NCBI RefSeq assembly: GCF_006345805.1
Contig: NW_021832124.1
Coordinates: 186,001-250,000, forward strand
DNA length: 64,000 bases
Direction: 5' to 3'
Source of the DNA: Octopus sinensis
Lineage: Eukaryota
Part shown: positions 9,053 to 44,733 of the stretch, piece after piece
How the letters are laid out: every line of letters starts with the position of its first letter
Numbering within the stretch: the stretch's first letter is position 1
The notes under the pieces: model-generated
Databases searched by the model: none
What the model was told of the DNA's origin: nothing
The model's input: the letters and a program-made list of their open reading frames with translations, nothing else
Made by a program: the position numbers and the translations under genes

Positions 9053-10325
9053 ATTATAACTGTGGGAACAAACCAGTCTGAAAAAATGTTTTTGTTTTAA
9101 AGCAATTTAACGAAGTTTAATTAATTAACAACTACAACTTTTATATTTGTGTATTAACAAATTTAAAAAATCAAAATCAATAAAAAATTCGATAATCAAT
9201 AAATTCGGGTCAGATCTAAGTAAAAAAATCGATGATTAGGAACTCGATAAACAATCGATAATTACTTTCTCGACCTAATATTTACTTTTGTGTATAAATG
9301 TAACAATTAATATGTAGAAATTTTATTTAAAAAATAAAGAATTTTAATAAAAGAAGTTATAATTTGAAAGATCATCATAATATTGCGGAAAGAAGCGTTC
9401 CTCATAACTCCACTCCCCAAAGTGGTTTTGATTTTCAGTCAGTGGGGGCTCATATGCATTCGAGTAAGTATATTCTTCAGTAGATTGATAAGGGACATCA
9501 TGATGAAAAGTGTAGGTATTTTTTTGTCCTTTTTCTCCTCATAAGATCCTGGGGTTGTTGTAATACAACCTTAAGACGCGGTTGAACTTGTCAACCGTCA
9601 TCTTAGGGTTGTTTTTCAACTCCCCCCACATTCTTGCAAGTTCTGGTGGATTGGTGATGCGAAACGAATTCGACATCCCAATCCACGTGAGATACGGACA
9701 CTTCTTGTTTAGGTTTTCAATAAGAAATTGATATAAATACGTCTTCATTTCCAATTAGTAATTGTCATCTGCAGAACGCACAGCACGTATTTATATTGTT
9801 CGTGGAGACGTAAATTACGGCAATTTTTGCGAATTTGCGTCTTTTTTATTAAAACGGCGTCAATTCCGGTTTGTTTTGAAGGTAAATTCGTAATAATTAA
9901 ATATAAATGAATTGCACCTGCTTCTTATCAACCCAAACTTAATCAACTCTTTTTGGACACCTAAACTAAATGTTATAAGATTTGAACTTGTTTGCCTCTT
10001 CGATTTGAATAAATATGAAGAAGGCACATGACTCTACTATGTCCACTTCGTTGAGTGCCTGGTGCTTATATTTCAGACATAGTGCAACTAAGATTCTTTG
10101 CCCCTCAACCAAAAAATTACAAAACACAGAAATTTAAAAACGAAGACGAAATGTATTCCCTACAAGTTCTCGCCCTCCACAGAGGTACTGGACTAGGATG
10201 GTCCAGAAGCCTTGATTATGTTCCTACGGAAGTGTCTTAATAGTAATAAAAAGTAGGATTAAGTAATTTATGAGAATTGAAACATATATTAAATATATAT
10301 GATTTACCAGTTTTCAAATATTATA
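9053..10325 (-). repeat. Copy A of a dispersed ~1.27-kb ETS-carrying repeat
   Basis: Segments align by eye to 8190-8356, 28729-29055, 41352-42300 and 44270-44733. Confidence 0.85.
9539..9748 (-). CDS. Intronless ETS-domain-only ORF (copy A); premature TGA removes the last ~12 residues relative to copy B
   Basis: MKTYLYQFLIENLNKKCPYLTWIGMSNSFRITNPPELARMWGELKNNPKMTVDKFNRVLRLYYNNPRIL aligns to the ETS consensus LWQFLxxLL...W...F....P.EVARxWGxxKNxPxMxYDKLSRALRYYY. TATAAATA lies ~40 bp upstream. Confidence 0.85.
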   Translation of the reverse strand: MKTYLYQFLIENLNKKCPYLTWIGMSNSFRITNPPELARMWGELKNNPKMTVDKFNRVLRLYYNNPRIL

Positions 10326-10336
10326 GAATAAACTAT

Positions 10337-10549
10337 ATGAATAAGAAGAAAGTGGTGTCTTTGGCATATATGTTTATCGGGTGGAATCTGCTGGGATTGG
10401 CACTTTATAAAAATGTCCAAATCAGTCCAACCTTCTTTGGTTGTCTCACTTTTAATGTTCCCAGACCTCCCACTTAACGAACGGATTCTCCGTACACTTG
10501 GTTTTATCCAAGTCCACGAAAAAACATGAATCTAGTTATACAAATAATT
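10337..10549 (+). CDS. Possible small single-pass membrane protein (1 intron)
   Basis: MNKKKVVSLAYMFIGWNLLGLALYKNVQISPTFF followed by a 25-nt GT-AG intron and DLPLNERILRTLGFIQVHEKT*. No family recognised. Confidence 0.35.
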
Positions 10550-10602
10550 TATTTTATTATTTTGTAAAACTAATTAAATAATAATAAATTGTTTGTGTTT
10601 CA

Positions 10603-11148
10603 ATGCCAAGTTGTGCATCCGACGATAAGCCCAAAAACGCCACAGAATGGCAGCGAAGGAAACTCGAAAAATTGATGGAAGAGCCAGTTAAACCCCCCAA
10701 ATTATCCACAGGACAAACCAGTCGTAATCCCCAACATGGCCGACCCAGTAAAGCCAACTGACCCCCCTCAGTTCGTCCATCACGTGTGGGGTACCCATAT
10801 ATAAGCACCTTCAAGGGTCAAGCGCTGGAGTGGGAAGTGGGGACTTTCACGTCTACCGGGGAATTCGTCGTCGGGAGTACGCCCGTCAGAAAATATTGGA
10901 ATATAACGCTTTCCAGGCAGGCCTAGTGAGTAACCCGCAGGACAAGGTGGCCAGGGAGTTCTACCAGCGAATGGAGGCAGAGACAATGATGTTGCAGGCA
11001 AAGACTGACAAGAAACACAAAAAGAGGTATTCGGGTGATTTAGTGGAGGGTTAAACGTAAAAATAAATTGAGGGAGTTGAAGGAAAAGGGTCTCTTTGTT
11101 AAGAAAAAGAAGAATGTCCAGTCACCAGAGGAATCATCTTCTGAATGA
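10603..11148 (+). CDS. PRKRIP1: PRKR-interacting protein 1 homolog (3 introns, 25/25/22 nt)
   Basis: Spliced: ...KLMEEP|DKPVVIP...DPPQFVHHVWG|SSAGVGSGDFHVYRGIRRREYARQK..., the PRKRIP1 signature. Confidence 0.92.
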
Positions 11149-11199
11149 TTATTTTTGATTAAATTTATAATGGATGTAAAATTCTTTAATTTATTTTTT

Positions 11200-11201
<2 letters not shown>

Positions 11202-11292
<91 letters not shown>
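11202..11292. repeat. Poly(T) tract, 91 nt
   Basis: Uninterrupted T run directly visible. Confidence 0.95.
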
Positions 11293-11296
<4 letters not shown>

Positions 11297-11312
11297 AATA
11301 TTAATACGTGTA

Positions 11313-12155
11313 ATGTTAATCTTCTTGTTTGTGGTGTCCTTTCAGTTCACCCACCCACATAAATGCACAATTTGCAGAAATGTGGTGGACAGATTTGAAC
11401 TGGTTGGCCATATTTATATCACCACAGAAAATGGCCGACACAGCAGGACTGAACTACGAAGGCGGAGACCCGACATGGCAGCAAAAGAATTTGGCCGCCT
11501 ACAAAGACAGTGAAATGCGACTTTATACAATTCTGGAAAATATATGCCACAATAAGCCCAATTCGAACACCCTCCAAGCTGACCAATGCAATTCCTTCCT
11601 CGGAGATGTGGAAGATGACTTGGTGGAGTGGTGGTCTACTGGAAGAGGAAAAAAGGGACTGTTTCAGACACTCTGTGTGGATATGTACAGTCTCTGCTGC
11701 CCCTTTGGTCACTATGGTCCTCACTGTCATCCCTGTCCTGCCGATTTGGGACCCCACTGTTCCTGCAATGTAGAGACTGGTCTCATTACTAGGGGAATGG
11801 GACGCGGAGTGGGACAGGAGTGTGTGACTGTTGGGAGGGCTATGTGGGCCAGGACTGTGAGGAATGCTCGATTGGCTACTTCCGGGAGGGCCAAACTTGC
11901 CAAAGTTAGTTTATGGGATATTTGGTAGAGTGTTCTCCTCCTTGCGACCAGTGCAGTGGGGGTGAGTATTGTGACTTGTGTGGTGAAGGATATGTGTTGA
12001 ATGAGGAAAGGAAGTGTGTGGATATTGATGAGTGTAATGAGAGGCCGTGTGGGAGGCAGGGAATATGTATTAATATTCCTGGGAGTTATCATTGCTCGTG
12101 TGGGGATGGTCTTCCTCCCACTGAGGGGCCGTGCTATCCTGATTCTGACTTGTGA
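11313..12155 (+). CDS. CRELD: Cysteine-rich with EGF-like domains protein (CRELD family)
   Basis: Signal peptide, CxxC (CTICRNVVDRFE), NYEGGDPTWQQKNLAAYKDSEMRLYTILENIC, CCPFGHYGPHCHPCP, and a Ca-binding EGF repeat (CVDIDECNERPC). Confidence 0.9.
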
Positions 12156-12489
12156 GTCTTAGTTGGCCTTATTTATTATCAAAGATGTTTAAAAATAATA
12201 CTTTTATCTGACTTGTGAGGTCTAGTTTGGTGAATGTCAACATTATAAAGTGTGCTGGTTTTTCAAGGATTAGTCATTGCAAGTTATGGTTGTGTTATTT
12301 TTACTGTGAAAGACCACCCACTTTTAAGAACACTATTTTGTGAGGAGGAATGAGACTTGAAACTGAAAAAAGTACAAATCGTAGTTGAAACATTGCAAAA
12401 AACTGGCTTTTGTACATTAAGATAAGATAAGTTTATTTGTCTCAAAAAAGATATTGGACATAAAGTTATTCACAAAGTTGTCCATCGCT

Positions 12490-13560
12490 ATTTCCTTCTC
12501 CTCTCTATAAACTTTCTGAACTGGCTTTCGACAAGGTCATAAAAACGTTTTCTGAAAGCTCGATATTTGCTCTCGTAGATTTACGCCAAAGGCCGCCTTG
12601 AGCGCTAGTCTCCTCGTTTTTTTCAGTAGTTTAATAATCCTTGCCTTAGAAGGGGACAAGATCCACCCTTCCAGCCCATACATCAGCACAGGAAGAATGG
12701 CTACTCGGAAAATGAATAGTACCGTCGCAGGAGATAGGCGAAAGAAATATGATCATTTGTGTACACCGTTTTTTCCTTAGAATAATGTCTTCGTCACACT
12801 TTCCATTTTCAGAAAATTTAACTCCCAGGTATAAAAACGATTGGGTCTTCCGAATAAAGTCAATCATGTTTGATAAGGCTTTTGCACTTCTTTTTGCTGA
12901 TACTTGAGTGAGCGTGCAATTGACAGAGTCAAGTACTTTACTGCCATCCACTGTTTTATTTGCTTTAAGTAAATACTCGGGATAACGTACGATACACTCT
13001 TTATCATTTCGCCAACACATTGAAAACTTGATTCACAAATGTGAAATGAACGCCATCCGCTCACTCACCGGACCAGACTTTGGACAAAACAAGGAATGCT
13101 TAATATTCCTATACAAACAATACATTGACAGTGTCAAGTACTTTACTGCCATTCACTGTTTTATTTGCTCTAAGTAGAATTTTAGTTTCATTTCCGATGT
13201 TGTAGGTAGGACTGTTTCGTCCATAAATAAGCACGCTAGCTGAGATGCACATTGGTTTTGGAAAGTCTGTCATGTACACGTTGAATAGTAATGAGCTGAG
13301 AACTGATCCTTCAGGTACTCCCCTTTTTTGGAGAATGGCTTTTAAATCTTGGCCAAGGTATTTGACAGAGGAGATTCTCCAATTCAAAAAGCTCGCTAAC
13401 CATCCAAGGGTTTCCGCATCGATGTCACAATTTTCAAGATTTTTCAGCAAGACTGAGTGACAGACAGTCAAAAGCTTTCGATGCATCCAAGCAGACAATA
13501 CTGGTCGATAAGAATTATTCCTTCTGATTCCAATGAAATGCAAAAATAAAAACGACATAA
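12490..13560 (-). mobile_element. Mosaic of decayed non-LTR RT fragments with internal duplication and an inverted LINE patch
   Basis: RGVPEGSVLSSLLFNVYM (RT motif), FLYLGVKF. ~58 bp duplicated at 12920-12977 and 13126-13183. Confidence 0.75.
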
Positions 13561-13938
13561 AGTAAAAAAAAGGACATCATAAAAATCATCCCCGTGCTCC
13601 CACGTGGCACAATTTATTAGGTTTGCCATGAATAATTAAGATAATTAAAAAAAAAAATTAATCAATAATTGATAAAAAATAAGCTTTATTTTAATTAAAA
13701 CTATTTTATATTTTAAAGGCTCTCGGGGCGCATTTTTGACACCCTGACTTAAGCTGTTTATATCTAAAATTGTAGTTTCTTATTTCAAATATTCTGATGC
13801 GCAAAAATGGGTTAATCATGAAACTCACGTTTGCTAAAATATTTTATAAAAGTCCACAAATTGAGGATAGGTAAATTTGTACAAAATAAGATAAGAATAA
13901 AAACAAATAAATAAGTTTGAGTTTCAAAAACGAATTTA

Positions 13939-14275
13939 TACAGTCCCGGCCAAATTTTAGAGGCACCGTATTTTTTTCTTAAAAATGCATATTTTTAGCA
14001 AAACTAGTTTTAAGTGAAGGACTTGATAATTTGTACGAGAAAGTGTATCTTGTTCAGCAAGAGGGAGCGACCTGTCATACATCCAGGTCAACCAAAGAAT
14101 ACCTCACTAAAAATAATATAAATCTGGCCGAGTCAGTCTCCGGACTTGAAAACAGTCGAAAATCTTTGGTCGATTTTAAAAAATAGAATGAGAAACGTCA
14201 ATGCGTCCTCAATTCAGGAATTATGCAGTGAGACAAAAAATGCATGGAATAACATCGACAGTGATGTCGTTTTAA
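13939..14275 (+). mobile_element. Truncated Tc1/mariner element (TA + left TIR, DD34E catalytic fragment)
   Basis: TA|CAGTCCCGGCCAAA terminus. FQQEGATCHTSRSTKEYL...WPSQSPDLKTVENLWSILK is the Tc1 QQDxAxxH...WPxxSPDLNPIENxW motif. Cut on the right by the LINE 3' end. Confidence 0.8.
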
Positions 14276-14279
14276 GTTC

Positions 14280-16760: not shown

Positions 16761-17027
16761 TTGAGGAACAATTCCTCTGTAGATACAGATCTGATAACTC
16801 CATTAGAGCGCCCATGTTGACCTGATGAAATATTAAAAACGCTGATTGGTTAAATAAACAGTTCCCATCGTAAAATGAAATTAAAAATCAATTTTATTTG
16901 TCAATCTTATTTTGGAAAAAAACCTTAAAAAATATTTTTTTAATCCCAAATAAGCAGAAAGGGTTATTAAAGACTCAGTAAACACACACATTTATTAATA
17001 AGAACCAAAATAATAAAATACGAACTA

Positions 17028-18902
17028 TTATAAAGATTTTTCAACAAAGTCTTTGAGAACGAGCTGTTTATAGTCATCAATAGTGCCATCCCACACATCG
17101 ACAGAGCCCTTTCGACATATCCAAATATCCTCAGCCACCTGAGAGATAAGCCTGAAGTCGTGGGACACCAGAATAACCCCTCCAGGGAAATCAACAAGGG
17201 CATCAGCAAGAGCATCGATAGTCTCCATGTCCAAATGATTCGTCGGCTCGTCCAGCAGGAGAATGTGCGGTCTCTGCCAAGCCAACCAAGCGAAGGTGAC
17301 ACGACAGCGCTGCCCGTCACTCAAATTCCTCATCACACAGACTTGTTGCTGTCCCGACAGACCATACCGGCCAATTATCTTCCTCATGTCCTCAATTTCC
17401 TTGACTTGGGGAAACTGCTTCATCATCCAATTGAGGGCGGACATATCCAAGTCAAGAATGTCCTGCAAGTGCTGATGATATCTCCCAAACTTGAGGTGGG
17501 CATTCCGCCTAATTGCCCCTTCCGTGGGCACCAACTTAACCATAAAACACACAAAACACCTCGTCGCATATCAGTTTGAGAAAAGTGGACTTTCCGGCCC
17601 CATTTCTGCCCACAAGTGCCAATCGAGTGTCCAAGTCAATCCCAAACTCCAAATTACGGAAAACGAAAGGCTCCTGCCCACTATAACTGAAGGACACGTT
17701 CTGAATCATAATCACAGGAGGCGGAATATCCGAACACCCAAAAAATGTGAACGCAGGAGCCTTCTCAGCCCCACTGGCCAACATGGCAGTACTCGTCCTC
17801 TCCATCATCCGATTCATTTGCTTCTCCCTACTTTTGGCCTGTCGAGCCAATTTGGCAGTCCCATGTCCGAATCGTGCAACGTAGTTCTTGAGGTGCTGCA
17901 TCTTCCCCTGCTCCCACTGCTGTCTCTTCTGCTGATTCTCCTCCATGTTGGCCCGAATGGTCACATACGAGTCATAATTCCCCTTAAATCACTCGCCACC
18001 ACTCACAGTGAACAAATGCAGCTTCTTTTTGAACATCAACAACACTCGTGTGCAGACTCCATTCAGGAAATCCTGCGAGTGGGAGACCACCACCAGAATG
18101 CCCTGGAAACTGCATTTAGTCACAAAGACTACGATTGGAGTTCCCTTTCCAGCCAAACACACGACTCGAGGTCCAAATGATTGGTCGGCTCGTCCAATAG
18201 GAGTAGGAGAGGACGAATTAGAAGAGCTCGGGCAAGGGAGACCCTCATCCGCCACCCACCGGAAAACGAGTTGAGAGGACGCTGCTGCATTTCGTTTGTA
18301 AATCCAAGACCGAACAGAATTTTGGCTGCCTTTGGACGGATTTTGTCAGGATCGATCAGGTCGAGTCGGTCGTAGATTGACATGAGGAGTTCATGGGACT
18401 CGGGACTGTCGGAGACCGCCAACTGGACGCTCTGTTCCTCAAAAATGGCACGTTCGGAGTCCACGTTGATTACACAGTCAATGACAGACTCCTCTGTGGA
18501 ATCCATTTCCTTGTGTAAATGATAAATGTCGATTTCAGGAGGAATGGGGAGATCACGGGCAGCAAGGGCACTCAGCAGGGTGGACTTGCCTTAATATGAC
18601 AGGCATTGGGTAATACCACAGCCATTACTCCAATCAGGCCATATCTCTGTCCGTAGTTGAGCTCAATCGAGGTGTCCATGAGAAGTTCAGTTCCGTGGTA
18701 GATGAGGCTTACTCCGTCGATGTGGACATCACGGGAATCGCCCTGTGAGGATAGTACCCCAGTACACGACCTGTATGCCTGTTCGGGGTCATTCTTGTTC
18801 TCTAATACCACAGCTTTGTGTGTTTTATACATAAAAGTTACTTTTTACAATTTTCGGCTCAGGTTTTTTTTTATTCCCCTTTCTCCTGTTATCAGATGGC
18901 AT
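17028..18902 (-). CDS. ABCF2: ABC-F family ATPase ABCF2; several short introns; one apparent 1-nt deletion at ~18628
   Basis: MPSD start, RSCTGVL, YGLIG(x)[21 protein letters not shown]...[34 protein letters not shown]...[17 protein letters not shown]. Confidence 0.95.
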
Positions 18903-24747: not shown

Positions 24748-25585
24748 TTATTTGGACTTGATAGCAGCAAGCAATTTTGACTTGCTGGCACCGCGAAGAC
24801 GTCCAGTCCTCCTCGCAGCAATAAGTCCAACCTTCCGTCCCGGAGGAGCATTACGACTAGTCGTGGAGGCCTTCCCAATGTGCTGGTGATTCCCACCACC
24901 AAACGGGTGTTCCGTCGGCTACAAATAACCACCATTTTCTCACATTCATTGCCACTCCTCTCACACGGGGCCAACACTTGCGTTTTCTCTTGTACTTCCA
25001 GTAAGCCCTCCCTGCCTTCAACAAGGGCTTCTCAAGACGTCCGCCTCCTGCCACAACCCCCACCACGGCTCGGTTGGTGGACGGAAATGTCTTTTTTATG
25101 CCAGAGGGGAGTTTTATTCGAGTAGTCCGGGCCTCCACGTTGTGGGAAATGACTGTGCTGTACCCTCCCGATGCACGTGACAACTTTCCTCGATCTCCAC
25201 ACTTTTCCTCCAATGAACTAATAATGGTCCCCTCAGGCATGGCTCCAATGGGCAGGACATTCCCGATGGACAGAGAGGCTAAGTGTGTCACCCAAACTAG
25301 TCAACCCTTCACTCCGCAGTATATGTGCTGGCCTGTGTAGAGTCCTTCTACGGCAGAGAAATGGTGAGACAGTCGACGGTATTTCTTGAGATCTCTGAAT
25401 TCGACCTTGGCTAAGGGAGCCCCTCGTCCAGGGTCGTGGATGATATCTTTCACGACTCCTTTTATATATCCGTGTTTTTCGGCGTAGTCGATGGGTCTTA
25501 ATTTTGCTGGGGCCTTCCTAAAGTGTGTCCTCGCCTTGAATATAGATCCTGCGCCCTTCCTTTGTGCTAAGATTACTCGTCCCAT
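24748..25585 (-). CDS. RPL8: 60S ribosomal protein L8 (uL2); introns of 27 and 25 nt
   Basis: [48 protein letters not shown]|[28 protein letters not shown]. Confidence 0.97.
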
Positions 25586-27998: not shown

Positions 27999-28535
27999 AT
28001 GATGAACCAAAATTGTTGGGAGCAGTACTGTGAGGACTCCAAATATTACCCACCTATTGAAGACACTTGTTCTGGAGATTCCTTTTTTACTGCTTCTAAT
28101 AATCCGATTCTCTACTCTGAGCAGTCTTACAACGGGTACTACGTGGAAACTGATTCTCCTTATTTTTATAACCTACAGGATACCCCAATCGAATACTCCG
28201 TAAAAATCTACGACATGAAGCCGGAAATCCCTTCATACAAATCTTTTGCTTTGGAAAGTCTGGTGGAGACAACCAAATGCAATAAAATACGACGAAATAA
28301 AAAGAAATTTGAGATGTTAAACGAAACCGAAAAACAGGAATTCCGACGACACCAAAACAGACTGGCGGCCAAACGTTGCCGTCAGAAAAAATTTGACAGA
28401 ATTGCTCAATTAGAGGAACAAATTAAGGCTGTGGACTATCAAATATGTCAACTAGACGAACGATTAAAGTCGGAAGAATTCACTTCAGAACATTTATTGG
28501 GTGACTTGTATTTGGTTTATTCGAATAAAAAGTAG
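27999..28535 (+). CDS. bZIP transcription factor (AP-1/Fos/ATF3-like), intronless
   Basis: Basic region RRHQNRLAAKRCRQKK followed by a heptad zipper (L-EEQIKA-V-DYQICQ-L-DERLKS). Confidence 0.88.
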   Translation: MMNQNCWEQYCEDSKYYPPIEDTCSGDSFFTASNNPILYSEQSYNGYYVETDSPYFYNLQDTPIEYSVKIYDMKPEIPSYKSFALESLVETTKCNKIRRNKKKFEMLNETEKQEFRRHQNRLAAKRCRQKKFDRIAQLEEQIKAVDYQICQLDERLKSEEFTSEHLLGDLYLVYSNKK

Positions 28536-28728
28536 ATTTTATCATATTTTATGTTAGTTGGAATGGCAATCTGACCTCATAAACGAGAGCAATTAGTGTG
28601 AATGTTCAATTTTAATTAAAAATAAAATGTCCGGAATTAACTGGTTGTAGTCTGCCTAAATCAGACAAGCTAGAATAAGTTTTGGTTTTTAATCTCCATC
28701 ATATTAATTAAAATTAATTATACTTTAT

Positions 28729-29055
28729 ATCCGCAGAATTTTATATCCGTATTTATATTGTTTGCAAAGACGCAAATTATGGCAATTTTTGCAAATTTAC
28801 TTCTTTTTTATTAAAACGGCATCAATTCCTGTTTAAGTGTTTACTCGTAATTATTAAATATAAATGTATTTATACATGCTCCTTATCCACCCAAGCTTAA
28901 TCAACTCTTTTTGGACACCTTAAGTTAATTTTTTGAGATTCAAACTTGTTTTCCTACTTAGTAGGTTGATCTCTTTATGTGGGTGAATGTGAAAAAAGCA
29001 CATGACTTTAATATGTGCACGTGTGGGATTAGAGGAGACTAGGATGGTTCAGAAG
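28729..29055 (-). repeat. Promoter-only remnant of the ETS repeat (no ETS ORF)
   Basis: Aligns to 9770-10207, including TATAAATA, GCAAAAATTGCC, AATCAACTCTTTTTGGACACC and GGACTAGGATGG. Confidence 0.8.
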
Positions 29056-31555: not shown

Positions 31556-31644
31556 TTTTGCTATTTGTGACTTTTCTTTTTAATTAGATATTTATTTTAA
31601 GATTTATTTAATAATTATTTATTTAATAATTATTAAATATTTTT

Positions 31645-35097: not shown

Positions 35098-35469
35098 TCT
35101 GTTTTATTCTCCTTTTAACTGAATTTAATCAAAATATAGTCAAATCAAACACAACTAAAAAAGCAATTTTTTAACTGGAATCAAGTCTTGTCAACGTTGC
35201 CCATCCGTGAGTCCTTCCGGAACGACATAGTTGCAAAAAGGGGATATCCTACCTTCTCTCTCACATTACTAATAAAAACTCTTCATCGGCGATGAGAATC
35301 ATCTCCCACCTCCATCTCTTTGCATACAGAAAAAACTGTAATGAGATGTGTGCTTAAAAACATTTGATATATTACTTTAAACGGAGTAGTTTTTAATCTG
35401 TTAGACTTTTTTATTAAAATGTCGAAATGCATATAAATATCACATTAATACAAAGAAACTAATTAATTG

Positions 35470-35870
35470 TTTAACTAAGTCCCAAGCTTTTGAAGTGAAC
35501 AGGGAGTGGCCCTTTTTCCTCCTCCTCTTCTCTGGCTCTGTAGACCTCCGAGGATATGCAGTCCAGCGCTCATCGCTGACTAAATGTCAGGAAAAGACTG
35601 GAACCCCAAAGACTGAGGGAACAGTTTAATATCGACTATGAATATGAGATGGTTAGTGCTATAACACTTTTCATTATGCTCGATCGACATTTGTTCTCTG
35701 CTTAGCAGTTCTAGGCACACGACAAACAGCAATATGCTGTCGCTATGTAATGTGCTCCTCTCTAGCATTTGTTGTAGTGTAAATGCACATTGAATCTGTC
35801 CATCACAGTTGCAACAAATTTTATAAACCACAAAGAAGTCTTCCCAGGCACTCTACGGAGTAGGCATGGT
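35470..35870 (-). mobile_element. R4/Dong-like RLE retrotransposon fragments (RT piece plus 3' end)
   Basis: LERSTLHSDSILLFVVCLELLS (degenerate RGILQGDSxSxLLFVLCLEPLS). The 3' end sequence is shared with 43129-43260 and 45070-45130. Confidence 0.7.
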
Positions 35871-36037
35871 CAACATTTGCCTTTTTCATATCCACCCACA
35901 TCGACTAGATCAAACTAGTAAGTTGGTAAAAAAATTTTAATCCCTAGAAAATATTGTGTTAAGGTGTCCAAAACAGCTGACTATCTATTGATCAGATCTC
36001 AACAGTAATATACGCGGGACAATGTGCCTATCAAGAA

Positions 36038-37905
36038 ATGACAAAGAATGTCAGGCCAACCAACGACTTGAAGGTCAATATGAAGAAAAAAGTTAAGGAC
36101 TGGAAGAAAAAATTGGAACTTATTCGAAAGCACTTTGAGCTTAGAGTTACATGTGATAAGAAAAATATCACCTATGATATTCTCAGTTCGCTAAGCTACA
36201 AAAAATCAAAAAAGGGAGAGAAAGAAAGAATTATGTCGCATATCGAAGACACTATAAAAATATTAGAAAAGAAAATTACTGTGTATGAGTTCAGAAGGGA
36301 ATTCAACCACGACAACCGCTTTCGAATTATATAAAAAAGCGTTCTACAGATCTTTGGACCCTGCTGATCATTTATCATCTAGCATGTTTAACCCAGATGA
36401 GTGTTTTAATTTTTGGAAATATATTTGGTCTAAAAGAACCAATACCTGTCAAAATGAGAAAATGAACTTGCCAGTCAGACAAACTGGGCAGAATCTGATA
36501 TATGCTCTATTAGTCAAGAACTTTTCGAAGATGTTATAAAATATCTTCCAAATTGGAGATCCTGTGGCTGCGAAGGGGTGTATAATTTTTTATTAAACAT
36601 TTCGAATCTTTACCTCTGTATATCTATACTGAAATCTTAAAAAATGGTAAAGAAGAGTACATACCTAACAATTAGTTTAACACTGGGATTACTTACCTCA
36701 TCCCAAAGAAGCCTAACTCGAATTTGCAAAAAGACCTCAGACCCATAACATGCATGCCAAACCTGTATAAAGTTCTCACTAAATGCGTAAATATAAAATT
36801 AACGGATTATTTGGAATATTATTCGCTTGTTTCAGGCCTTGATTAGCAAGAGTATAAACTTGGCCTAAGGAAACAATCTGTTTACATCCTTGATAGATGT
36901 GAAGAAAGCTTTTGATCGTGTGGATCATAACTTTTTTATTACGTGTTGGACTGCTCCGGGCTACTAACTTGGATTACCAGGTTCGTAATGACCTAAAAAT
37001 TTTGGCGGAAAAACAAGAAACGATATCTATGATGATAAATGACATCGACATATTTTTTGCTGATATTGGCCTTGAAAGAAATCTAGAAAAATCTGCCACA
37101 AATTGTACAACTCTTGCTAATAAAGAGACTATACTGTACGGAATTGACGGATACCAATATTTGGGAGTCTTAGAGACAAGTCAAATAAAATCATGAAGAA
37201 TGAGATGATGGAAAAAATAAGTGCAGAGATCAAAGCACGTATAAAGAGACTAACAGGCACGAAACTGAATGGTATTAATCTTTTTAATTTACAATTATTA
37301 CATTGGATTGATAGACATAAAACCTGATGAGTTTGAAGTAATTGACAGAGAAATTCGTCTACAACTTAATTCATATCACATACACTTGAGACCTGCAAAT
37401 TGTCAGAGACTATATCTCCCTCGTACATACCTTGGAAAAGGATTGGAATCAATATCGATGAAGAGCGAAAGAATGCTACTGGAATTCTATACTGACATAA
37501 AAAAATCGGTAGGCTTTCTAAGAAAGGCTGGTATTCTGCGGACTGAAAATTTAATGAAAACCCATTTGGACACCATCGCAGACTACTTAAAGCATAAACA
37601 GACCAAATATAACAATGAAATCAACATAAAAAATTTAAAGGAAATTCAACTCAAATACCTTCTTGATATTATCGAAAAGTTTACATTCATCACTTTACAA
37701 ATGCAACAAACATTCATTCCGATATTAAAGGATCTTCTTTGTGGTTGCAGGAAGGCAATATATGCCCAAGTAGTGAGAGTCTATATTGCTTGCTGCAAGA
37801 TATAAATCTGTTCTTTCAGAACGAGATGTAAATTGTCCAGAAAAACTCCACAAATACGACCTACTTGCAAGTGACATCGGACTGTTACATAGTGCCAAAG
37901 TACAA
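36038..37905 (+). mobile_element. Decayed R4/Dong/NeSL-like RLE non-LTR retrotransposon, cut by a Helitron at its 3' side
   Basis: FNFWKYIW, YLIPKK...DLRPITCMPNLYKVLTK, DVKKAFDRVDH, YQYLGVLE, RLYLPRTYLGKGL, EKLHKYDLLASDIGLLHSAKV. Confidence 0.85.
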
Positions 37906-37926
37906 TCTTAATAATAAAATGGTATG

Positions 37927-37976
37927 GTGTGTGTCTGTGTCTGTCTGTCTGTGTGTGGTCTGTCTGTCTGTCTGTG
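37927..37976. repeat. (GTCT/GT)n microsatellite in the Helitron 5' region
   Basis: gtgtgtgtctgtgtctgtctgtctgtgtgtggtctgtctgtctgtctgtg directly visible. Confidence 0.9.
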
Positions 37977-38104
37977 CACACCCACATTCAAATTGTTACA
38001 AACCAGATCAAATTGTCAAAACCTTCCCTTTTGTAGTTATTCGATAATGAGGCACAATAAAAGGTTGATATCCTCTAAGAACCTTCCTGTCAAAAAATTT
38101 TAAT

Positions 38105-39750
38105 AAGAAAGAATATCCTCGATGATGAGGTCCCCCAAAACCTTCAAGTCAATTTTCTGCGTTTTTGTTAAAATGAACAACAAGAAAGTCCTCGACTCAC
38201 ATGATGTGGTCCCCCAAAACCTTCAAGCCAAAAAATTAAAAAAAATTATTTTCTGCGTTTTTGTTAAAATGAACAACAAGAAAGTCCTCGACTCACATGA
38301 TGTGGTCCCCCAAAACCTTCAAGCCAAAAAATTAAAAAAAATTATTTTCTGCGTTTTTGTTAAAATGAACAACAAGAAAGTCCTCGACTCACATGATGTG
38401 GTCCCCCAAAACCTTCAAGCTAAAAAATTAAAAAAATTATTTTCTGCGTTTTTGTTAAAATGACCAACAAGAAAGTCCTCGACTCACATGATGTGGTCCC
38501 CCAAAACCTTCAAGCCAAAAAATTAAAAAAAATTATTTTCTGCGTTTTTGTTAAAAGAACAACAAGAAAGTCCTCGACTCACAATGTGGTCCCCAAAACC
38601 TTCAAGCCAAAAAATTAAAAAAAATTATTTTCTGCGTTTTTGTTAAAATGAACAACAAGAAAGTCCTCGACTCACATGATGTGGTCCCCCAAAACCTTCA
38701 AGCTAAAAAATAAAAAAAATTTTTTCTGCGTTTTTGTTAAAATGACCAACAAGAAAGTCCTCGACTCACATGATGTGGTCCCCCAAAACCTTCAAGCAAA
38801 AAATTAAAAAAAATTATTTTCTGCGTTTTTGTTAAAATGAACAACAAGAAAGTCCTCGACTCACATGATGTGGTCCCCCAAAACCTTCAAGCAAAAAAAT
38901 TAAAAAAAATTATTTTCTGCGTTTTTGTTAAATGAACAACAAGAAAGTCCTCGACTCACATGATGGGTCCCCCAAAACTTCAAGGTAAAAAATTAAAAAA
39001 ATTATTTTCTGCGTTTTTGTTAAAATGAACAACAAGAAAGTCCTCGACTCACATGATGTGGTCCCCCAAAACCTTCAAGGTAAAAAATTAAAAAAATTAT
39101 TTTCTGCGTTTTTGTTAAAATGAACAACAAGAAAGTCCTCGACTCACATGATGTGGTCCTCCAAAACTTTCAAGCCAAAAAATTAAAAAAATTATTTTCT
39201 GCGTTTTTGTTAAAATAAACAACAAGAAAGTCCTCGACTCACATGATGTGGTCCCCCAAAACCTTCAAGCCAAAAAATTAAAAAAAATTATTTTCTGCGT
39301 TTTTGTTAAAATGAACAACAAGAAAGTCCTCGACTCACATGATGTGGTCTCTCAAAACCTTCAAGCCAAAAAATTAAAAAAAATTATTTTCTGCGTTTTT
39401 GTTAAAATGAACAACAAGAAAGTCCTCGACTCACATGATGTGGTCCCTCAAAACCTTCAAGCCAAAAAATTAAAAAAATTATTTTCTGCGTTTTTGTTAA
39501 AATGAACAACAAGAAAGTCCTCGACTCACATGATGTGGTCCCCCAAAACCTTCAAGCCAAAAAATTAAAAAAAATTATTTTCTGCGTTTTTGTTAAATGA
39601 ACAACAAGAAAGTCCTCGACTCACATGATGTGGTCCCCCAAAACCTTCAAGCCCAAAAATTAAAAAAAAAATATTTTCTGCGTTTTTGTTAAAATGAACG
39701 ACAAGAAAGTCCTCGACTCACATGATGAGGTCCTCCACAACCTTCAAGCC
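38105..39750. repeat. Tandem array, 17 full units of ~95 bp (93-97) plus a partial first unit
   Basis: GTCCTCGACTC recurs at 38188, 38284, 38380, 38475, 38570, 38663, 38757, 38852, 38947, 39040, 39135, 39230, 39326, 39422, 39517, 39612 and 39709. Units differ mostly in homopolymer length. Confidence 0.97.
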
Positions 39751-40379
39751 TCGTGAGGCCATTAATTAGCTTAGCTATCTTTTTTCGATGACATAAATTC
39801 TTTTTTGTTAAATTTTCGTTAAAAAAATAAAATAAAAGCTCTAATTGTTATCGACCATGAATATACTGTGCAATTATCAGATTTTGAAAACCACTAAAAA
39901 GGAAAAAGCAAAAATTATTAGAGATTTACATAATTGATTCTTTTTAACTGCCGAAACTGACAAATTCGATTATGCTACTGTTTAGATTTCTTAAAAGATA
40001 GAGGCAAATAAAATTTAAATTAGTCATGTAAATTTCAATTTGCCTATATTTAAATCTCCTTGATTTAACAGGCTTTAACCGAAACAGACAAGTTCGATTA
40101 TGCTAAAGTTTCAATTCCTTTAAACATAGAGGCAATTAAGTATAATGGCTTTGATTGGATAATACACTTTACATAAATTTCACTAAATAAATTTACGTAG
40201 AAAATTTAATATAAATTACTGATTCGCGTTTACAAAATCATAAGAATGTCCTATAAAGAGAGATCTGAGAATGTTAACAAACAAGAGAATATGAACCATA
40301 TAACAAAAAAAGAGAAACGAGGGAAGATGTGCTTAAATGGTGAGGGAACTTAGACAACAGCTGGACAAGGTCAGGACTG

Positions 40380-41221
40380 CTGTTAGACTCAACTACGGGT
40401 AATAGAATTATGCATTCTAGGTTAATTGTTTGGGATGAATGTACGATGGCTCATAAAGGCGCATTCAAGCAGTTGACCGAACATATAGAGATATCAAGAA
40501 TTGTAGCGACCATTTGTTTGGGGGAGCATTAGTTGTATTGGCAGGTGATTTTAGACAGACGCTGCCAATTATTCAAAGAGGGACGCCTGCGGATGAATTG
40601 AATGCCTGCCTCAAATCGTCATATTTGTGGACACACGTGAAAAAGGTAAGCTTAGATGTAAATGTACATGCACATTTACAAGGCGTTAATAGCATATTCC
40701 CACAAATCCTTCTAGATATTGGAAATGGGGCAATCACTTCAGAAATGCACGACCAGAAAATTAGGCTACCGGAAGAATTATGTATTTTCGTAGAAACAGC
40801 AGAAGAATTATTGAATGCCGTCTATTCCGAACTATCTGAACACTACGTGAATTTCGACTGGCTGCGTGAACGAGCTATATTAGCTCCACTTAATGATGAG
40901 GTACTTAATATAAATTTAGATTTATTAATGAAAATCCCTGGCAGAGAAAGAATATATAAATCGGTCGACGTTATTATGGACCATGAAAGGGCCTGCGATA
41001 GATTTAAGAGACTACAATTTCCGCTGAAGATAAGTTTTGCTATGACAATAAACAAGGCCCAGGGACAGTCTTTAAAGGTAGTAGGCTTATTTTTAGAGAA
41101 CGAGTGCTTTTCACATGGCCAGCTGTATGTGGGGGCTCAAGGGTAGGTAGAAGAGAAATTTATTTATATTTGCCAAGGATGGACGGACTGCAAACATCGT
41201 TTATCCACAGGCCTTAGAATA
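40380..41221 (+). pseudogene. Helitron PIF1-type helicase remnant
   Basis: ORF 40514-41146 plus flanking frameshifted segments. An internal deletion lies between SVDVIMD and RLQFP. Confidence 0.88.
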
Positions 41222-41351
41222 AGGTTATATCAAAGCAGGTCGCATTTATATATCTACATAAATTTATAGTTATTTAAGGAAACTGCGAGCGTAGCGAGCA
41301 GGGCCTCCGCAGGAGCTAGCTCGCAGTGAGCGAAGCGAACTGCTGAGCTAG

Positions 41352-42300
41352 TTTTTTAATAATTACGAATTAACACTTAAAACAAACGACGTGCGCCATT
41401 GTAATAAAAAAGAAGTAAATTTGCAAAAATTACCATATCAATTTCTCATTAAAAATTTGAACAAAAATTGCCCTTATCTCATGTGGATTGGGATGTCAAA
41501 TTCGTTTCGCATCACCAATCCACCAGAACTTGCAAGAATGTGGGGGGAGTTGAAAAACAACCCTAAGATGACGGTTGACAAGTTCAACCGCGTCTTAAGG
41601 TTGTACTACAACAACCCCAGGATCTTAAAAGAGAAAAAGGACAAAAAATACCTATACTTTTTATTATGATGTTCCTTGGGATTCTACTGAAGAATATACA
41701 CCTTACTACTCGAATGCATATGAGCCCCCACTGACTGAAAATCAAAACCACTTTGGGGAGTGGAGTTTCTTTCCGCAATATTATGATGATTTTTCAAATT
41801 ATAACTTCTTTTATTAAAATTCTTTTATGATGATATTTGGTCAAAAGATATCCCTTGGCAATCTATTGAGACGCCTCTTTCCTCAATATTACAAAGATCT
41901 GTCAAACTTTGACTTCTTTTATTGAAATTATTCATTCTTTAAATAAAATTTCCATATATTAATTGTTACATTTATACAAAATACTAGGTTGGGAAAGAAA
42001 TGATCGATTTTCTCTTAGATCTGACCCAAGTTTATTGATTATCGATTGTTTTGAAACAAAAACAGTAAAATTGCCGTAATTGCGTCTCCACGAACAATAT
42101 AAATACGTGTTTTGAGTTCTGCGGATGATAATTACTTTTTTGAAATGAAGATTTGTTTATACGAATTTCTCATTGAAAATTTAAACAATAAATGCACTTA
42201 TTTCTGAATGTGAAGACATACTTTCGGGGCTATACAATTTATTGATTATCCACTCCTTCTGAAATAAAACAAACTGGTTTGTCCTCACAGTTATTAATAA
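41352..42300 (+). repeat. ETS repeat copy B (ORF 41391-41669, TATA/ATG deleted) with nested truncated copy D (42067-42207)
   Basis: Near-identical ETS coding sequence to 9539-9748, but read through to ...ILKEKKDKKYLYFLL*. A second 5' piece with TATA and MKICLYEFLIENLNNKCTYF* lies at 42145-42207. The 3' flank aligns to 9053-9480. Confidence 0.88.
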
Positions 42301-43124
42301 AAAGAAAGCTATTTTGCTCAAAATATTCCTTGCCTGAGATCTCCATTACTGAAATTGTTTTGTCAAAGAGTGGTCATTGGAGCAAATATTTCTGCAATCA
42401 TTAGGAATAAATAATCCTGTATAACTTGTTTACCGTTATTTGGAAATTAAGTTATTTTTTAATAACTCTTAATTTTTGAGAGTGCAATAGATTTTCCAAA
42501 TTCTCTGCAAGTCAGTAAATCTACAAGACTGTTTGAAAACGTTCTAAAATCCATGAAAGACAATATTAAAAACAAGAACGATTTTTATGTCGAGCCAAGT
42601 TTGTACATATAAATGACTAGTTGGTCACTTGATCAAGAATGAGGCTCAAACGAATTCAACGGGAAATATAATTTAACTTGTAATGGAAATTTGAAATTAT
42701 TGTCATACAAATACAACAACAATGACCGACAAGTCCCTTCATTCAAGTTATCAAAATATGGCAAGACAAAATTACTTCTCACGTGAAAAATCCGAGGATC
42801 TCGGAAATAATACTCAAAAAAACTTGAGAAAATTGTATCAGTACAATCACTGTTCATAATGTTTATCAGAATTTAAAAATGTCTTCATATCAATTGTTTT
42901 AGAAAAAGAAAAGATTTGAAGAACCAATAAACATAAGAATAATGAGTAGTGATAAATAAAGAATGAAAATAATTCACAATAATGAAAAAATATTTACAAA
43001 TTAAATAACACTGCTACACCACAAAAAATACAAATAAAAGTACACGTGTGAACGTATGCAGAATTAATTTTGTTTTATTAATTTATATTGATAAAAAAAG
43101 AAACTAATTAACTAAGTGATTTTT

Positions 43125-44278
43125 ATAGCTAAGTCCAAGTCTTCGAAGTCAGCAGAGGGTGGCACTCCACACATTTCCTTCCCTTCTTCCTCCTCTTCTC
43201 TGGCACTGTAGACCTTCGAGAAGGTGCAATCCAGGGCCTTTCGCTGACTAAACGTGGTGGAGAGTACAACATTCCAGATCCTCAATATCTTCAAAATGGA
43301 AGTAATGGATGTTGTCGAGTCTTTTACTCACGTATTCGAATAGTTGTATTGCACAATTTCAAATTGATTTGCAAAATGTTAGAATGGACGGATGACCTCG
43401 ACTTGAGAGTAGGTATTGTCTAATTGGTAGATTGTGATCATTTCCTTAAAAAGCAGATCTGCAACATCCCCAGCAACAGCCACAATCCACACTTCCTTCC
43501 CAGAAATCGAGGACTTTTACAAGGACTTTGTCACCCTCGGGTCGGTGGTGAATGACTGTGGTTTGTTGGATTTGTGCTATCTCAGGACTGCAGCAATTTT
43601 TGTAATTCTCTCGGAGTAATCTTCGGACAATAAGGTCCATTTCATCACTCGGCTCCAATTCGATCAGACCAACCTATCGCGTACTCGCAATGAGATGGCG
43701 TACTCGTTCAAGGCATGAAATAAGTTCCGTGCATTGAGGCAAGTTTTACATAACATTGCCGCCCTACTACGCACACTTTCTCGTTTCGGGTGTGATTAAT
43801 GAGGCTGGGCTCTCAATCACACCAAGATACTTATTACCTTGGTGTTCCTCCAAGACTTTGACTAGGTCACCAGGGGTGTTAGTCGCCGACTTGTTGTAGT
43901 TGAGCTCCAGCCCCACGGCCTTCATGAAACCTTTCAAGACTTTGCCCATCGAGTGGAGGATCTCTGAAGACCGAGCGGACAGTTTTATGTCGTAAAACAT
44001 CCTCCTTCATGTTCGATCGACATTTGTTAGAATTGGGCAGTGAGGACTCTACTCAGCGGTTCTAGGCAGAGGACAAACAGCAGCAGAGACATGCTGTCGC
44101 CCTGTAATATGCCCCTCTCTAGCTTCACCTCGCCTATATCGCAATTGTTGTAATGCAGATGAACGTTCCACCTGTCCATCACTGTTGCAACAAATTTGAG
44201 AAAACCATGGAGGCAACCTAAGCCTTCGCAGACACTCAACGAGGTAGGCATTACCACAGAGAGCATGTGTAAATTCAT
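43125..44278 (-). mobile_element. R4/Dong-like RLE retrotransposon fragments (RT to 3' end)
   Basis: LERGILQGDSMSLLLFVLCLEPLS, FYDIKL, GLELNYNKSA, KYLGVIE. The 3' end is homologous to 35477-35590. Confidence 0.8.
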
Positions 44279-44733
44279 TTATATTTAATGATTACAAATT
44301 TATCTTCAAAACAAACCGGAATTGACGCCGTTTTAATTAAAAAAGACGCAAATTCGCAAAAATTGCCGTAATTTACGTCTCCACGAACATATAAATACGT
44401 GCTGTGCGTTCTGGGATGACAATTACTAATTGGAATGAAGACGTGTTTTATATCAATTTCTTATTGAACACCTAAACAAGAAGTGTCCGTATCTCACGTG
44501 GAAGGGATGTCGAATGTCGTTTCGCATCACCAATCCACCAGAACTTGCAAGATGTGGGGGGAGGTTGAAAAACAACCCTAAGATGACGGTTGACAAGTTC
44601 AACCGCGTTTAAGGTGTTGTACTACAACAACCCCAGGATCTTAAGAAGAGAAAAAGGACAAAAAAATTACCTACACTTTTCATCATGATGCCCTTATCAA
44701 TCTACTGAGAAATATACTTACTCGAATGCATAT
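44270..44733 (+). repeat. ETS repeat copy C (ETS region 44435-44690, many indels)
   Basis: Aligns to the reverse complement of 9450-9915 with scattered 1-nt indels. Retains ACCGGAATTGACG and TATAAATA upstream. Confidence 0.88.

What the first reader, a model, noticed from the sequence alone, without database searches (positions are those of the whole stretch)
9053..44733. A dispersed repeat carrying an intronless ETS-domain-only mini-gene: five or more related copies in 64 kb
Seen: the same ~1.3-kb sequence family occurs at 9053-10325 (-), 28729-29055 (-, promoter only), 41352-42300 (+), 42067-42207 (+, 5' piece) and 44270-44733 (+), with ends also at 8190-8356. It encodes only an ~80-aa ETS winged-helix domain with no activation or PNT domain and no introns, in a genome where nearly every gene is intron-dense. 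It keeps the W, WG, KN, MT and R-x-L-R-x-Y-Y recognition-helix residues. Copies sit among R4, hAT and Helitron debris, and copy B starts immediately after a Helitron CTAG end. Known: ETS genes are normally low-copy host transcription factors, and DBD-only variants can act as competitive repressors. Inference: a mobile or amplified cassette that has captured a host ETS domain and spreads it genome-wide, possibly as a dominant-negative or self-binding factor.
Basis: partly seen in the sequence, partly recalled or inferred. Interest (0 to 1): 0.82.

Follow-up and report, generated by a model that had tools for sequence, protein, structure and literature searches.

The report
Local cluster of mini-ETS genes
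A roughly 1-kb unit carrying a single-exon, 134-residue ETS transcription-factor gene recurs at least seven times within about 103 kb of one Octopus sinensis contig. It looks like a young, locally amplified gene family with many dead copies; nothing shown here makes it a transposon or spreads it genome-wide.

Summary
The repeat is real. The window is Octopus sinensis contig VCDQ01000438.1, positions 186001-250000. It holds three ETS-coding copies: A (9025-9987, -), B (41355-42311, +) and C (44249-44733, +). It also holds a nested 5' piece, a promoter-only copy and a 3'-end fragment.

All three coding copies in the window are broken. Two intact 134-aa copies lie 56-59 kb to the left of the window start on the same contig. 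One of them is annotated as XP_029654840.1.

The unit is a TATA promoter, an intronless ORF and about 300 bp of 3' sequence. The ORF encodes a full ETS domain plus a 52-aa acidic and aromatic tail. The reading frame is under purifying selection (dN/dS 0.11 between the intact copies). It is far more conserved than its flanks.

Divergence is mosaic along the unit, which points to gene conversion between copies. The unit has no terminal inverted repeats, no poly(A) tail and no Helitron ends. It is too long at both ends to be an mRNA retrocopy. The Helitron end next to B is unique to B.

Every copy seen lies on one contig. Genome-wide spread could not be tested, because the protein database proved nearly blind to cephalopods. 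"Amplified cassette" is supported. "Mobile", "genome-wide", "DBD-only" and "self-binding" are not.

The parts
9025..9987 (-). Copy A: the most complete unit in the window (promoter, ORF, 3' region). It is a pseudogene by one nonsense codon.
   Evidence: 93.5% identical over 967 bp to intact copy L1, with no indels in the ORF.
9344..9748 (-). Copy A reading frame: 134 codons plus stop. ATG at 9746-9748, in-frame TGA at 9539-9541 (codon 70, AGA in intact copies), normal TAA at 9344-9346.
   Evidence: Translation; Pfam Ets E=1.1e-17; codon alignment.
9786..9798 (-). TATA box region (CAATATAAATACG) about 45 bp upstream of the ATG. It is conserved in A, D (28748-28760), the nested piece in B (42095-42107), C (44387-44399, one base missing), L1 and L2.
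   Evidence: Motif search; sequences.
9317..9331 (-). AATAAA polyadenylation signal about 15-20 bp after the stop codon. The repeat unit runs about 270-300 bp beyond it.
   Evidence: conserved in B (41938-41952), L1 and L2.
9940..10062 (-). Upstream part of the unit, derived from a LINE reverse-transcriptase region lying antisense to the ETS gene. The same junction is shared by D, L1 (46 bp), and C and L2 (with a roughly 110-bp deletion).
   Evidence: Homology to an independent LINE copy at 35844-35983.
8990..9049 (-). Short fragment of the same LINE's 3' terminus (antisense) directly after the unit's 3' end. It is shared with L1.
   Evidence: Alignment A4.
8190..8368 (-). Orphan 3'-end fragment of a unit (8227-8368), followed by 63 bp (8190-8252) that also occur upstream of A (10270-10328).
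28716..29020 (-). Copy D: promoter only (LINE-derived part, core promoter, TATA box). Homology stops just before the ATG. A weak extra match extends to 29055.
   Evidence: 74.8% over 313 bp to A and 82% over 224 bp to L1; sequence.
41355..42311 (+). Copy B: a rearranged pseudogene. It has a promoter fragment without TATA or ATG (41355-41437) and an ORF with one-base deletions (41435-41816). It also has a diverged partial duplicate of the tail (about 41822-41925) and a 3' region. A nested second 5' fragment (42067-42204) carries a TATA box, an ATG at 42146 and about 19 codons.
44249..44733 (+). Copy C: promoter plus ORF truncated in the tail. It has about 14 one-base indels against 14 substitutions relative to A.
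43088..44251 (-). 5'-truncated LINE (reverse transcriptase on the minus strand) running from its 3' terminus (GAAACTAATTAAC at 43100-43112) up to the promoter of copy C.
   Evidence: Translation with RT motifs; Pfam RVT_1 E=1e-6, 29.1 bits, just under the 29.6 cut-off; alignment A4.
35426..35983 (-). Independent copy of the same LINE without any ETS gene. It shows which part of the unit is LINE-derived.
40514..41351 (+). Helitron remnant: PIF1-like helicase ORF (40514-41146) and a 3' end with GC-rich hairpins ending in CTAG at 41348-41351. Copy B starts immediately after it. No other copy has this end.
   Evidence: Pfam PIF1 E=6.3e-16; fold of -32.6 kcal/mol and BLAST showing the end is unique.

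Best explanation
This is a young, lineage-specific multigene family. Its gene is single-exon and encodes a divergent ETS DNA-binding domain (residues 5-83) fused to an acidic, aromatic-rich 52-residue tail, driven by its own TATA promoter. The gene has been amplified at the DNA level within one chromosomal neighbourhood of Octopus sinensis. At least seven copies or fragments lie within about 103 kb, scattered between unrelated housekeeping genes.

The copies exchange sequence by gene conversion or unequal recombination, and most decay. The three coding copies in this window are pseudogenes, while two intact copies 56-59 kb left of the window start are kept by purifying selection.

Inferred, not shown:
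- The intact proteins bind GGA-type ETS sites through the conserved recognition-helix arginines.
- Given the tail's composition, they act as small activators rather than as DBD-only blockers.
- The founder arose as an intronless copy of the 3' part of an ERG/FLI/ETS1-type gene. It landed next to a LINE fragment, which now forms the distal part of its promoter.
For: Location:
- The window equals VCDQ01000438.1:186001-250000. The only database relative (XP_029654840.1) lies on the same contig at 127369-127701.
- That locus holds two intact 134-codon ORFs 2.2 kb apart.

Selection:
- Among A, L1 and L2, the ORF differs by 2-4.4% while the flanks differ by 7-18%.
- dN/dS between L1 and L2 is 0.11, and 0.04 within the ETS domain. 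The excess of synonymous changes has binomial p=4e-4, and p=1e-5 for L1 against B.

Mosaic history:
- L2 has 1 private change in 405 ORF positions but 17 of 192 in the 5' flank and 43 of 275 in the 3' flank.
- L1 has 1 of 192 in the 5' flank but 11 of 405 in the ORF.
- Uniform decay of transposon copies does not predict this pattern. Gene conversion does.

Common descent by DNA-level duplication:
- All copies share the same junction with an antisense LINE fragment.
- Sub-groups share further flank features: A with D upstream, C with L2 a roughly 110-bp deletion, and A with L1 a LINE-terminus stub.

Unit structure:
- It contains the TATA box and at least 120 bp upstream of it, and runs about 270-300 bp past the AATAAA signal.
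- It has no TIRs and no tail repeats or poly(A) at unit ends.

Protein:
- Pfam Ets above the curated cut-off.
- Closest PDB relatives are FLI1, ERG and ETS1, and the R-x-x-R of helix 3 is kept.
- The tail has net charge -10 and 14 aromatic residues out of 52.
Against: - The units are short (about 1 kb) with fairly sharp ends and unrelated flanks. They sit between unrelated conserved genes (RPL4, a DUF3456 gene, ABCF2, RPL8, a Myb-repeat gene). Simple tandem duplication does not produce that layout, whereas insertion of a small mobile segment would.
- Only 84 kb of one 303-kb contig could be inspected, so copies elsewhere in the genome are neither shown nor excluded.
- Expression of any copy is unknown.
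- DNA binding and activation are inferred from sequence only. Several residues assumed from memory to contact the phosphate backbone differ from canonical ETS proteins (GKRY becomes GPKN, Y395 becomes L, the first Trp of helix 1 becomes Tyr).
Confidence: 0.6

Rival explanations
1. The unit is a non-autonomous mobile cassette. The ETS gene would be moved by a transposon's machinery, either by Helitron 3'-end bypass or by read-through transcription that ends in a LINE 3' tail. It would spread preferentially to linked sites and perhaps across the genome.
For: - The segments are short and discrete, with unrelated flanks, and are interspersed among host genes.
- B begins exactly after a Helitron hairpin+CTAG end. 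Helitron end-bypass transduction has been shown experimentally (PMC4778049, abstract seen).
- Copy C has the structure expected of a 5'-truncated retrocopy of an 'antisense ETS + LINE tail' transcript. A LINE runs unbroken from the ETS promoter to its own 3' terminus, and the ETS side is cut off.
- On the ETS 3' side the end points form a series (D < C < L2 < B < A < L1).
Against: - The Helitron end is present only at B, and the unit itself has no hairpin/CTRR end.
- Only C has the LINE continuous to its terminus. In A, D, L1 and L2 the LINE part is 15-140 bp and then gives way to other sequence. A and D share non-LINE sequence beyond it.
- There are no TIRs. No TSD was seen by eye around C.
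- Divergence along the unit is mosaic rather than uniform.
- All known copies are on one contig.
Confidence: 0.25
2. The copies are processed retropseudogenes made repeatedly from the mRNA of one expressed intronless parent gene.
For: - The gene has no introns.
- 5' limits differ between copies while 3' limits are similar (A-equivalent 9025-9060).
- LINE reverse-transcriptase sequences are abundant nearby.
Against: - Every copy, including the promoter-only one, carries the TATA box and at least 120 bp upstream of it. An mRNA would not contain these.
- The unit continues about 270-300 bp beyond the AATAAA signal and has no poly(A) tract.
- Retrocopies scatter across the genome rather than clustering within 103 kb.
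Confidence: 0.05
3. The repeats are an assembly artefact: collapsed or duplicated haplotigs, or mis-joined long reads.
For: Copy C has about as many one-base indels as substitutions (14 and 14 in 472 bp), many in short homopolymers. That is typical of poorly polished long-read consensus.
Against: - Copies differ by 6-18% in non-coding parts.
- They have different flanks and different rearrangements.
- They lie between intact single-copy host genes. Duplicated haplotigs would be near-identical and collinear.
Confidence: 0.03

Closest known systems
ETS transcription factors of the ERG/FLI/FEV and ETS1/ETS2 groups
   Same: - Full ETS winged-helix domain: Pfam PF00178 at 64.5 bits against a cut-off of 26.9.
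- 43-45% identity to ERG-like proteins.
- The two helix-3 arginines and the core tryptophans of strand 1 and helix 2 are kept.
- RefSeq names it 'protein C-ets-2-like'.
   Different: - Only 134 aa, with no PNT/SAM domain and a single exon.
- Multi-copy, whereas ETS genes are normally single-copy.
- Very divergent: the next best hits among 1.84 billion representatives are only E about 1e-14.
- Helix-1 Trp becomes Tyr, Tyr395 becomes Leu, and the wing motif GKRY becomes GPKN.
Young multi-copy intronless transcription-factor genes embedded in repeat units, such as the DUX4 retrogene in D4Z4 arrays (from general knowledge, not tested here)
   Same: - An intronless DNA-binding-domain gene with an acidic C-terminal region.
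- It is carried inside a short repeated unit that also contains TE-derived sequence.
- Many copies are dead and a few are intact.
- Copies evolve in concert.
   Different: - The units here are not a regular head-to-tail array. They are scattered over about 100 kb between host genes.
- The DNA-binding domain is ETS, not homeobox.
- Expression timing is unknown.
Gene capture by Helitrons or Pack-type transposons
   Same: A host-gene-derived fragment is found in several copies near TE sequence. One copy abuts a Helitron 3' end.
   Different: - Captured fragments are usually non-functional pieces lying inside recognisable element termini.
- Here the unit is a complete gene with its own promoter, under purifying selection.
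- It has no element termini.
v-ets of the avian E26 retrovirus, the historical case of an ETS gene carried by a mobile genetic element (from general knowledge)
   Same: ETS coding sequence without introns, linked to a mobile-element context.
   Different: That is a retroviral fusion oncogene. Nothing here is retroviral: no LTRs and no gag/pol/env context, only LINE fragments in antisense.
DBD-only ETS isoforms such as Ets-1 p27, which act as dominant negatives (PDB 3ri4 appears among the hits)
   Same: A small protein dominated by the ETS domain.
   Different: The octopus protein keeps a conserved, strongly acidic and aromatic tail. That predicts activation rather than passive competition.

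Membership tests
ETS-domain transcription factors (Pfam PF00178) | Sequence match to the ETS winged helix-turn-helix domain over its full length, above the curated threshold | tested here: met
   64.5 bits against a cut-off of 26.9, profile positions 2-80 of 81. 55 PDB ETS chains match at E<=1e-3.
ETS-domain transcription factors (Pfam PF00178) | Two invariant arginines in recognition helix 3 that read the GGA core | tested here: met
   N-R-V-L-R-L-Y-Y aligns with S-R-A-L-R-Y-Y-Y of FLI1. This is kept in A, B, L1 and L2.
ETS-domain transcription factors (Pfam PF00178) | Sequence-specific binding to GGA(A/T) DNA | not testable with these tools
   Needs EMSA, SELEX or PBM with the 134-aa protein.
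Helitron (autonomous or non-autonomous) | Unit ends with a 3' hairpin followed by CTRR and starts with TC, inserted between A and T | tested here: not met
   Unit 3' ends read ...CCCACAGTTAT(T)AATAAA with no GC hairpin. The only hairpin+CTAG end (41275-41351) belongs to a neighbouring Helitron and is unique in 84 kb.
Cut-and-paste DNA transposon or MITE | Terminal inverted repeats flanked by target-site duplications | tested here: not met
   The inverted-repeat search of A and of L1/L2 gives only short AT-rich chance pairs, none at the unit ends.
Processed retrocopy (LINE-mediated retroposition of an mRNA) | Copy starts at or after the transcription start, ends at the polyadenylation site with a poly(A) tract, and lacks the promoter | tested here: not met
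   All copies include the TATA box and upstream sequence. They run about 270-300 bp past AATAAA and have no poly(A).
LINE transduction product | Every copy is contiguous with a LINE that runs to its own 3' terminus, with truncation only at the far end | tested here: inconclusive
   True for C (LINE 43088-44251). In A, D, L1 and L2 only 15-140 bp of LINE remain and other sequence follows.
Genome-wide dispersed repeat | Copies on many unlinked contigs or chromosomes | not testable with these tools
   - No octopus genome is searchable with these tools.
- All copies seen lie on one contig.
- A control with a housekeeping ABCF2 exon found no cephalopod protein other than the window's own ORF call. 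Database silence therefore carries no weight.
Locally amplified multigene family with concerted evolution | Linked paralogues, a shared ancestral junction, purifying selection on intact members, pseudogenes, and mosaic divergence | tested here: met

The most novel reading that the evidence does not exclude
The mini-ETS unit is a self-contained gene cassette of promoter, ORF and terminator. It duplicates into nearby sites by a mechanism that leaves no classical transposon termini, for example LINE-tail-dependent retroposition of an antisense read-through transcript, as the structure of copy C suggests. Its product would be a lineage-specific ETS activator. It may work together with the divergent intronless Jun-like bZIP gene that sits inside the same cluster. 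This would be a cephalopod counterpart of repeat-embedded factors such as DUX4.
Probability: 0.15. Interest if true: 0.75.

Novelty: new member of a known kind. Interest (0 to 1): 0.4.

Why it matters
ETS genes are normally single-copy, intron-rich developmental regulators. A cluster of tiny intronless ETS genes that is being born, homogenised and killed in one neighbourhood is therefore an unusual example of transcription-factor family turnover. It occurs in cephalopods, a group already known for other transcription-factor expansions (C2H2 zinc fingers).

If the intact copies are expressed, they are candidate lineage-specific regulators, with an easily tested DNA-binding domain and activation tail.

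For genome annotation there are two practical points. The RefSeq model appears to start 24 codons too late. The window's copies should be flagged as pseudogenes rather than as a transposon family.

Tried and rejected
- Counting copies through the protein databases. The word-indexed search, the exhaustive HMMER search of 1.84 billion representatives and exact look-ups all found only XP_029654840.1. A control with a housekeeping ABCF2 exon then showed the database holds essentially no cephalopod proteins. This silence is uninformative, and I do not use it as evidence for restriction or for lack of expression.\n- Walking along the contig. Look-ups of window ORFs near the left edge were not on record, and only window-encoded proteins may be looked up. 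The 48-kb gap between the two loci and the rest of the contig remain unseen.\n- The top multi-domain hits (P0002-P0004, E about 1e-24) looked like close relatives. They score high only because they contain two or three ordinary ETS domains.\n- Terminal inverted repeats: none.\n- Helitron as the general vehicle: its 3' end is unique to B. The missing half of B's promoter was not found upstream of the Helitron.\n- Viral origin: no relative in IMG/VR. An exact 59-mer found nothing in JGI metagenomes.\n- hAT debris next to A. It was read by eye from an hAT-like C-terminal motif (my recollection of the family) in the translation of 8360-9040(-). Pfam did not confirm it, so it is left as unconfirmed.\n- R4 identity of the LINE: not determined. 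Pfam gives only RVT_1, at about the cut-off.\n- Homology between the ETS tail and the Tyr-rich N-terminus of the neighbouring bZIP gene: none, only similar composition.\n- An apparent 1.4-kb upstream collinearity between A and C. It was only an A-rich low-complexity match.\n- Literature searches found no description of ETS expansion in cephalopods or of TE-borne ETS domains.

Full report
**Observation.**
Self-comparison of the window confirms the repeat.
- Copy A (minus strand) matches C (44262-44733) at 94% over 479 bp and B (41435-41825) at 89% over 405 bp.
- It matches a second 5' piece nested in B (42067-42204) at about 83-84%, and a promoter-only copy D (28716-29020) at about 75-76%.
- An orphan 3'-end fragment lies at 8227-8368.
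- tblastn with the intact protein finds no further copies in the 84 kb available.
- The reading frame is an ETS domain: Pfam PF00178, E=1.1e-17, covering profile positions 2-80 of 81. The best solved relatives are FLI1, ERG and ETS1.

**Where this is.**
The only close database relative is XP_029654840.1, 'protein C-ets-2-like' of Octopus sinensis.
- Its locus (L001) is contig VCDQ01000438.1, positions 117369-137701.
- Looking up the intronless bZIP ORF of the window placed the window on the same contig at 186001-250000. A 20.5-kb stretch is identical.
- The 'second locus' is therefore only 48 kb to the left of the window.
- Everything seen so far (L1, L2, A, the 3' fragment, D, B, C) lies within about 103 kb of one 303-kb contig.

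**Anatomy of the unit.**
L001 carries two intact 134-codon ORFs, L1 and L2, 2.2 kb apart. Comparing all copies, the shared unit is about 0.9-1.0 kb and has these parts:
- A distal promoter part that is homologous to the antisense reverse-transcriptase region of a LINE. An ETS-free copy of that LINE lies at 35426-35983.
- A core promoter with a conserved TATAAATA about 45 bp before the ATG.
- The ORF, followed by an AATAAA about 15-20 bp after the stop.
- A further 270-300 bp that ends at ...CCCACAGTTAT(T)AATAAA.
- In A and L1, a 45-60-bp stub of the same LINE's 3' terminus follows.

The protein is the ETS domain (residues 5-83, net charge +10) plus a 52-residue tail. The tail has 10 acidic residues, no basic residues and 14 aromatic residues. 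From general knowledge, this is the composition of acidic activation domains, so 'no activation domain' is not a safe description. The RefSeq model starts at Met25 and would lack helix 1. The upstream 24 codons are conserved with synonymous differences, so the 134-aa frame is the likelier product.

**State of the copies.**
All three coding copies in the window are broken.
- A has a single AGA-to-TGA change at codon 70 and no indels.
- B lacks the TATA box and ATG. It has one-base deletions, a 12-bp deletion, a diverged partial duplication of the tail, and a nested second 5' fragment.
- C is cut off in the tail. It has about 14 one-base indels against 14 substitutions in 472 bp, and that ratio suggests long-read consensus errors as much as decay.
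- D keeps only the promoter.

**Selection and history.**
- Among A, L1 and L2 the ORF differs by 2.0-4.4%, while the 5' flank differs by 10-16% and the 3' region by 7-18%.
- dN/dS is 0.11 for L1 against L2, and 0.04 within the ETS domain. Comparisons that include the pseudogenes give 0.15-0.22, except A-L2 at 0.58, which rests on only 7 changes.
- The excess of synonymous changes is significant (p=4e-4 to 1e-5). The frame has therefore been a working gene for most of the family's history.
- Branch lengths disagree sharply between segments. L2 has 1 private change in the ORF but 17 and 43 in the two flanks. L1 has 1 in the 5' flank but 11 in the ORF.
- Selection on the protein cannot explain an ORF with almost no synonymous change lying inside strongly diverged flanks. 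Recent gene conversion can.
- Sub-groups of copies also share flank features: A with D upstream, C with L2 a roughly 110-bp deletion, and A with L1 the LINE stub. All copies share the same ETS/LINE junction. This points to descent from one ancestral locus by DNA-level duplication.

**Is it a mobile element?**
- I found no terminal inverted repeats, no poly(A) or tail repeats, and no hairpin/CTRR end on the unit.
- It cannot be an mRNA retrocopy, because every copy carries the promoter and runs well past the polyadenylation signal.
A PIF1-helicase ORF lies at 40514-41146, and GC-rich hairpins end in CTAG at 41351 with B starting at the next bases. However, this end occurs nowhere else in the 84 kb, so it is a neighbour of B and not the vehicle of the family.
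- The most mobile-looking feature is copy C. A LINE runs unbroken from the ETS promoter to its own 3' terminus (43088-44251), and the ETS side is truncated. This is the structure of a 5'-truncated retrocopy of an antisense read-through transcript ending in a LINE tail.
- The other copies do not share that continuity, so I keep this as a minority reading.
- What does argue for some insertional process is the layout. The units are short with unrelated flanks, and they are scattered between RPL4, a DUF3456 gene, ABCF2, an LRR gene, RPL8, a GCNA-like HMG exon and a Myb-repeat gene. They are not arranged in a plain tandem array.

**Limits.**
Genome-wide copy number and expression could not be tested.
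- The large protein collections returned only XP_029654840.1.
- A control with a housekeeping ABCF2 exon returned only the window's own ORF call, and then hits of 76% identity or less. These collections are therefore effectively blind to cephalopods, and their silence means nothing.
- Attempts to read more of the contig failed.
- IMG/VR and JGI metagenomes hold nothing related.
- Literature searches found no prior description.

**Other claims.**
- The proposed self-binding site is not conserved. CCGGAAT in A and C (CAGGAAT in D) reads CCGGAC in both intact copies.
- LINE sequences are confirmed as reverse transcriptase, but the clade (R4 or other) was not determined.
- The hAT-like stretch next to A was seen by eye only, and Pfam did not confirm it.

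**Verdict.**
The best explanation is a young, locally amplified and partly homogenised family of a single-exon mini-ETS gene (confidence 0.6). The window holds its pseudogenes, and two selected, intact members lie nearby. The transposon-cassette reading remains possible (about 0.25) and would be settled by one whole-genome BLAST. It is a new member of a known kind of phenomenon, namely lineage-specific transcription-factor gene amplification with pseudogenes, and it is of moderate interest.

Noticed in passing
window 27999-28535 (+): An intact, intronless 178-aa bZIP gene sits in the middle of the ETS cluster, about 180 bp from promoter-only copy D and convergent with it. Pfam gives bZIP_1 at E=8e-9, and the closest solved relatives are Jun/JunD (E about 2e-5). 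Its N-terminal 100 residues are Tyr- and acid-rich like the ETS tail, but not homologous to it. ETS and AP-1 factors are known to cooperate, so the co-location may or may not be meaningful. It is single-copy in the 84 kb seen.
   Followed up: partly
window 38152-39750: A satellite of 16.8 copies of a 95-bp unit (96% matches) lies immediately upstream of the Helitron helicase remnant. It may be cargo of that Helitron-like element.
   Followed up: no
window 11190-11292: An uninterrupted run of 103 T (A on the minus strand) lies between copy A and the DUF3456-domain gene. It could be a real homopolymer or a long-read assembly artefact.
   Followed up: no
window 44262-44733: Copy C has as many one-base indels as substitutions relative to its relatives, many in short homopolymers. 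This suggests poor consensus polishing in this repeat, so its frameshifts should not be trusted without read support.
   Followed up: partly
L001 9930-10334 (contig VCDQ01000438.1, about 127298-127702): RefSeq protein XP_029654840.1 (110 aa) starts at an internal Met and lacks ETS helix 1. The conserved frame begins 24 codons upstream and gives 134 aa. The second intact copy, L001 12154-12558, has no annotated protein in the collections searched.
   Followed up: yes
window 43088-43112, 35452-35464; L001 about 20047: Three copies of the same LINE all end at exactly the same terminus (AAAGAAACTAATTAAC... on the antisense strand), each abutting a TTATTAA/ATTAATA-like A/T-rich site. This suggests a target preference. 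The same terminus abuts the 3' end of ETS units A and L1.
   Followed up: partly
window 3209-4280, 17028-18506, 24857-25291, 46333-46869, 51500-63024: The host context is ordinary and gene-rich. It includes RPL4-like exons, ABCF2, RPL8/L2-like and PDI-like exons, an LRR gene, a GCNA-like HMG exon, a Myb-repeat (SNAPC4-like) exon in a GC-rich stretch, and a large axonemal dynein heavy-chain gene on the minus strand. Apart from Pfam hits on four of them (Myb, DUF3456, a weak HMG box, ABC transporter), these names come from reading the ORF translations.
   Followed up: partly
protein collections: For this contig the large protein collections hold only isolated ORF calls, and they hold no other cephalopod orthologue even of a housekeeping ABCF2 exon. 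A negative result from them for any octopus finding should not be read as absence.
   Followed up: yes
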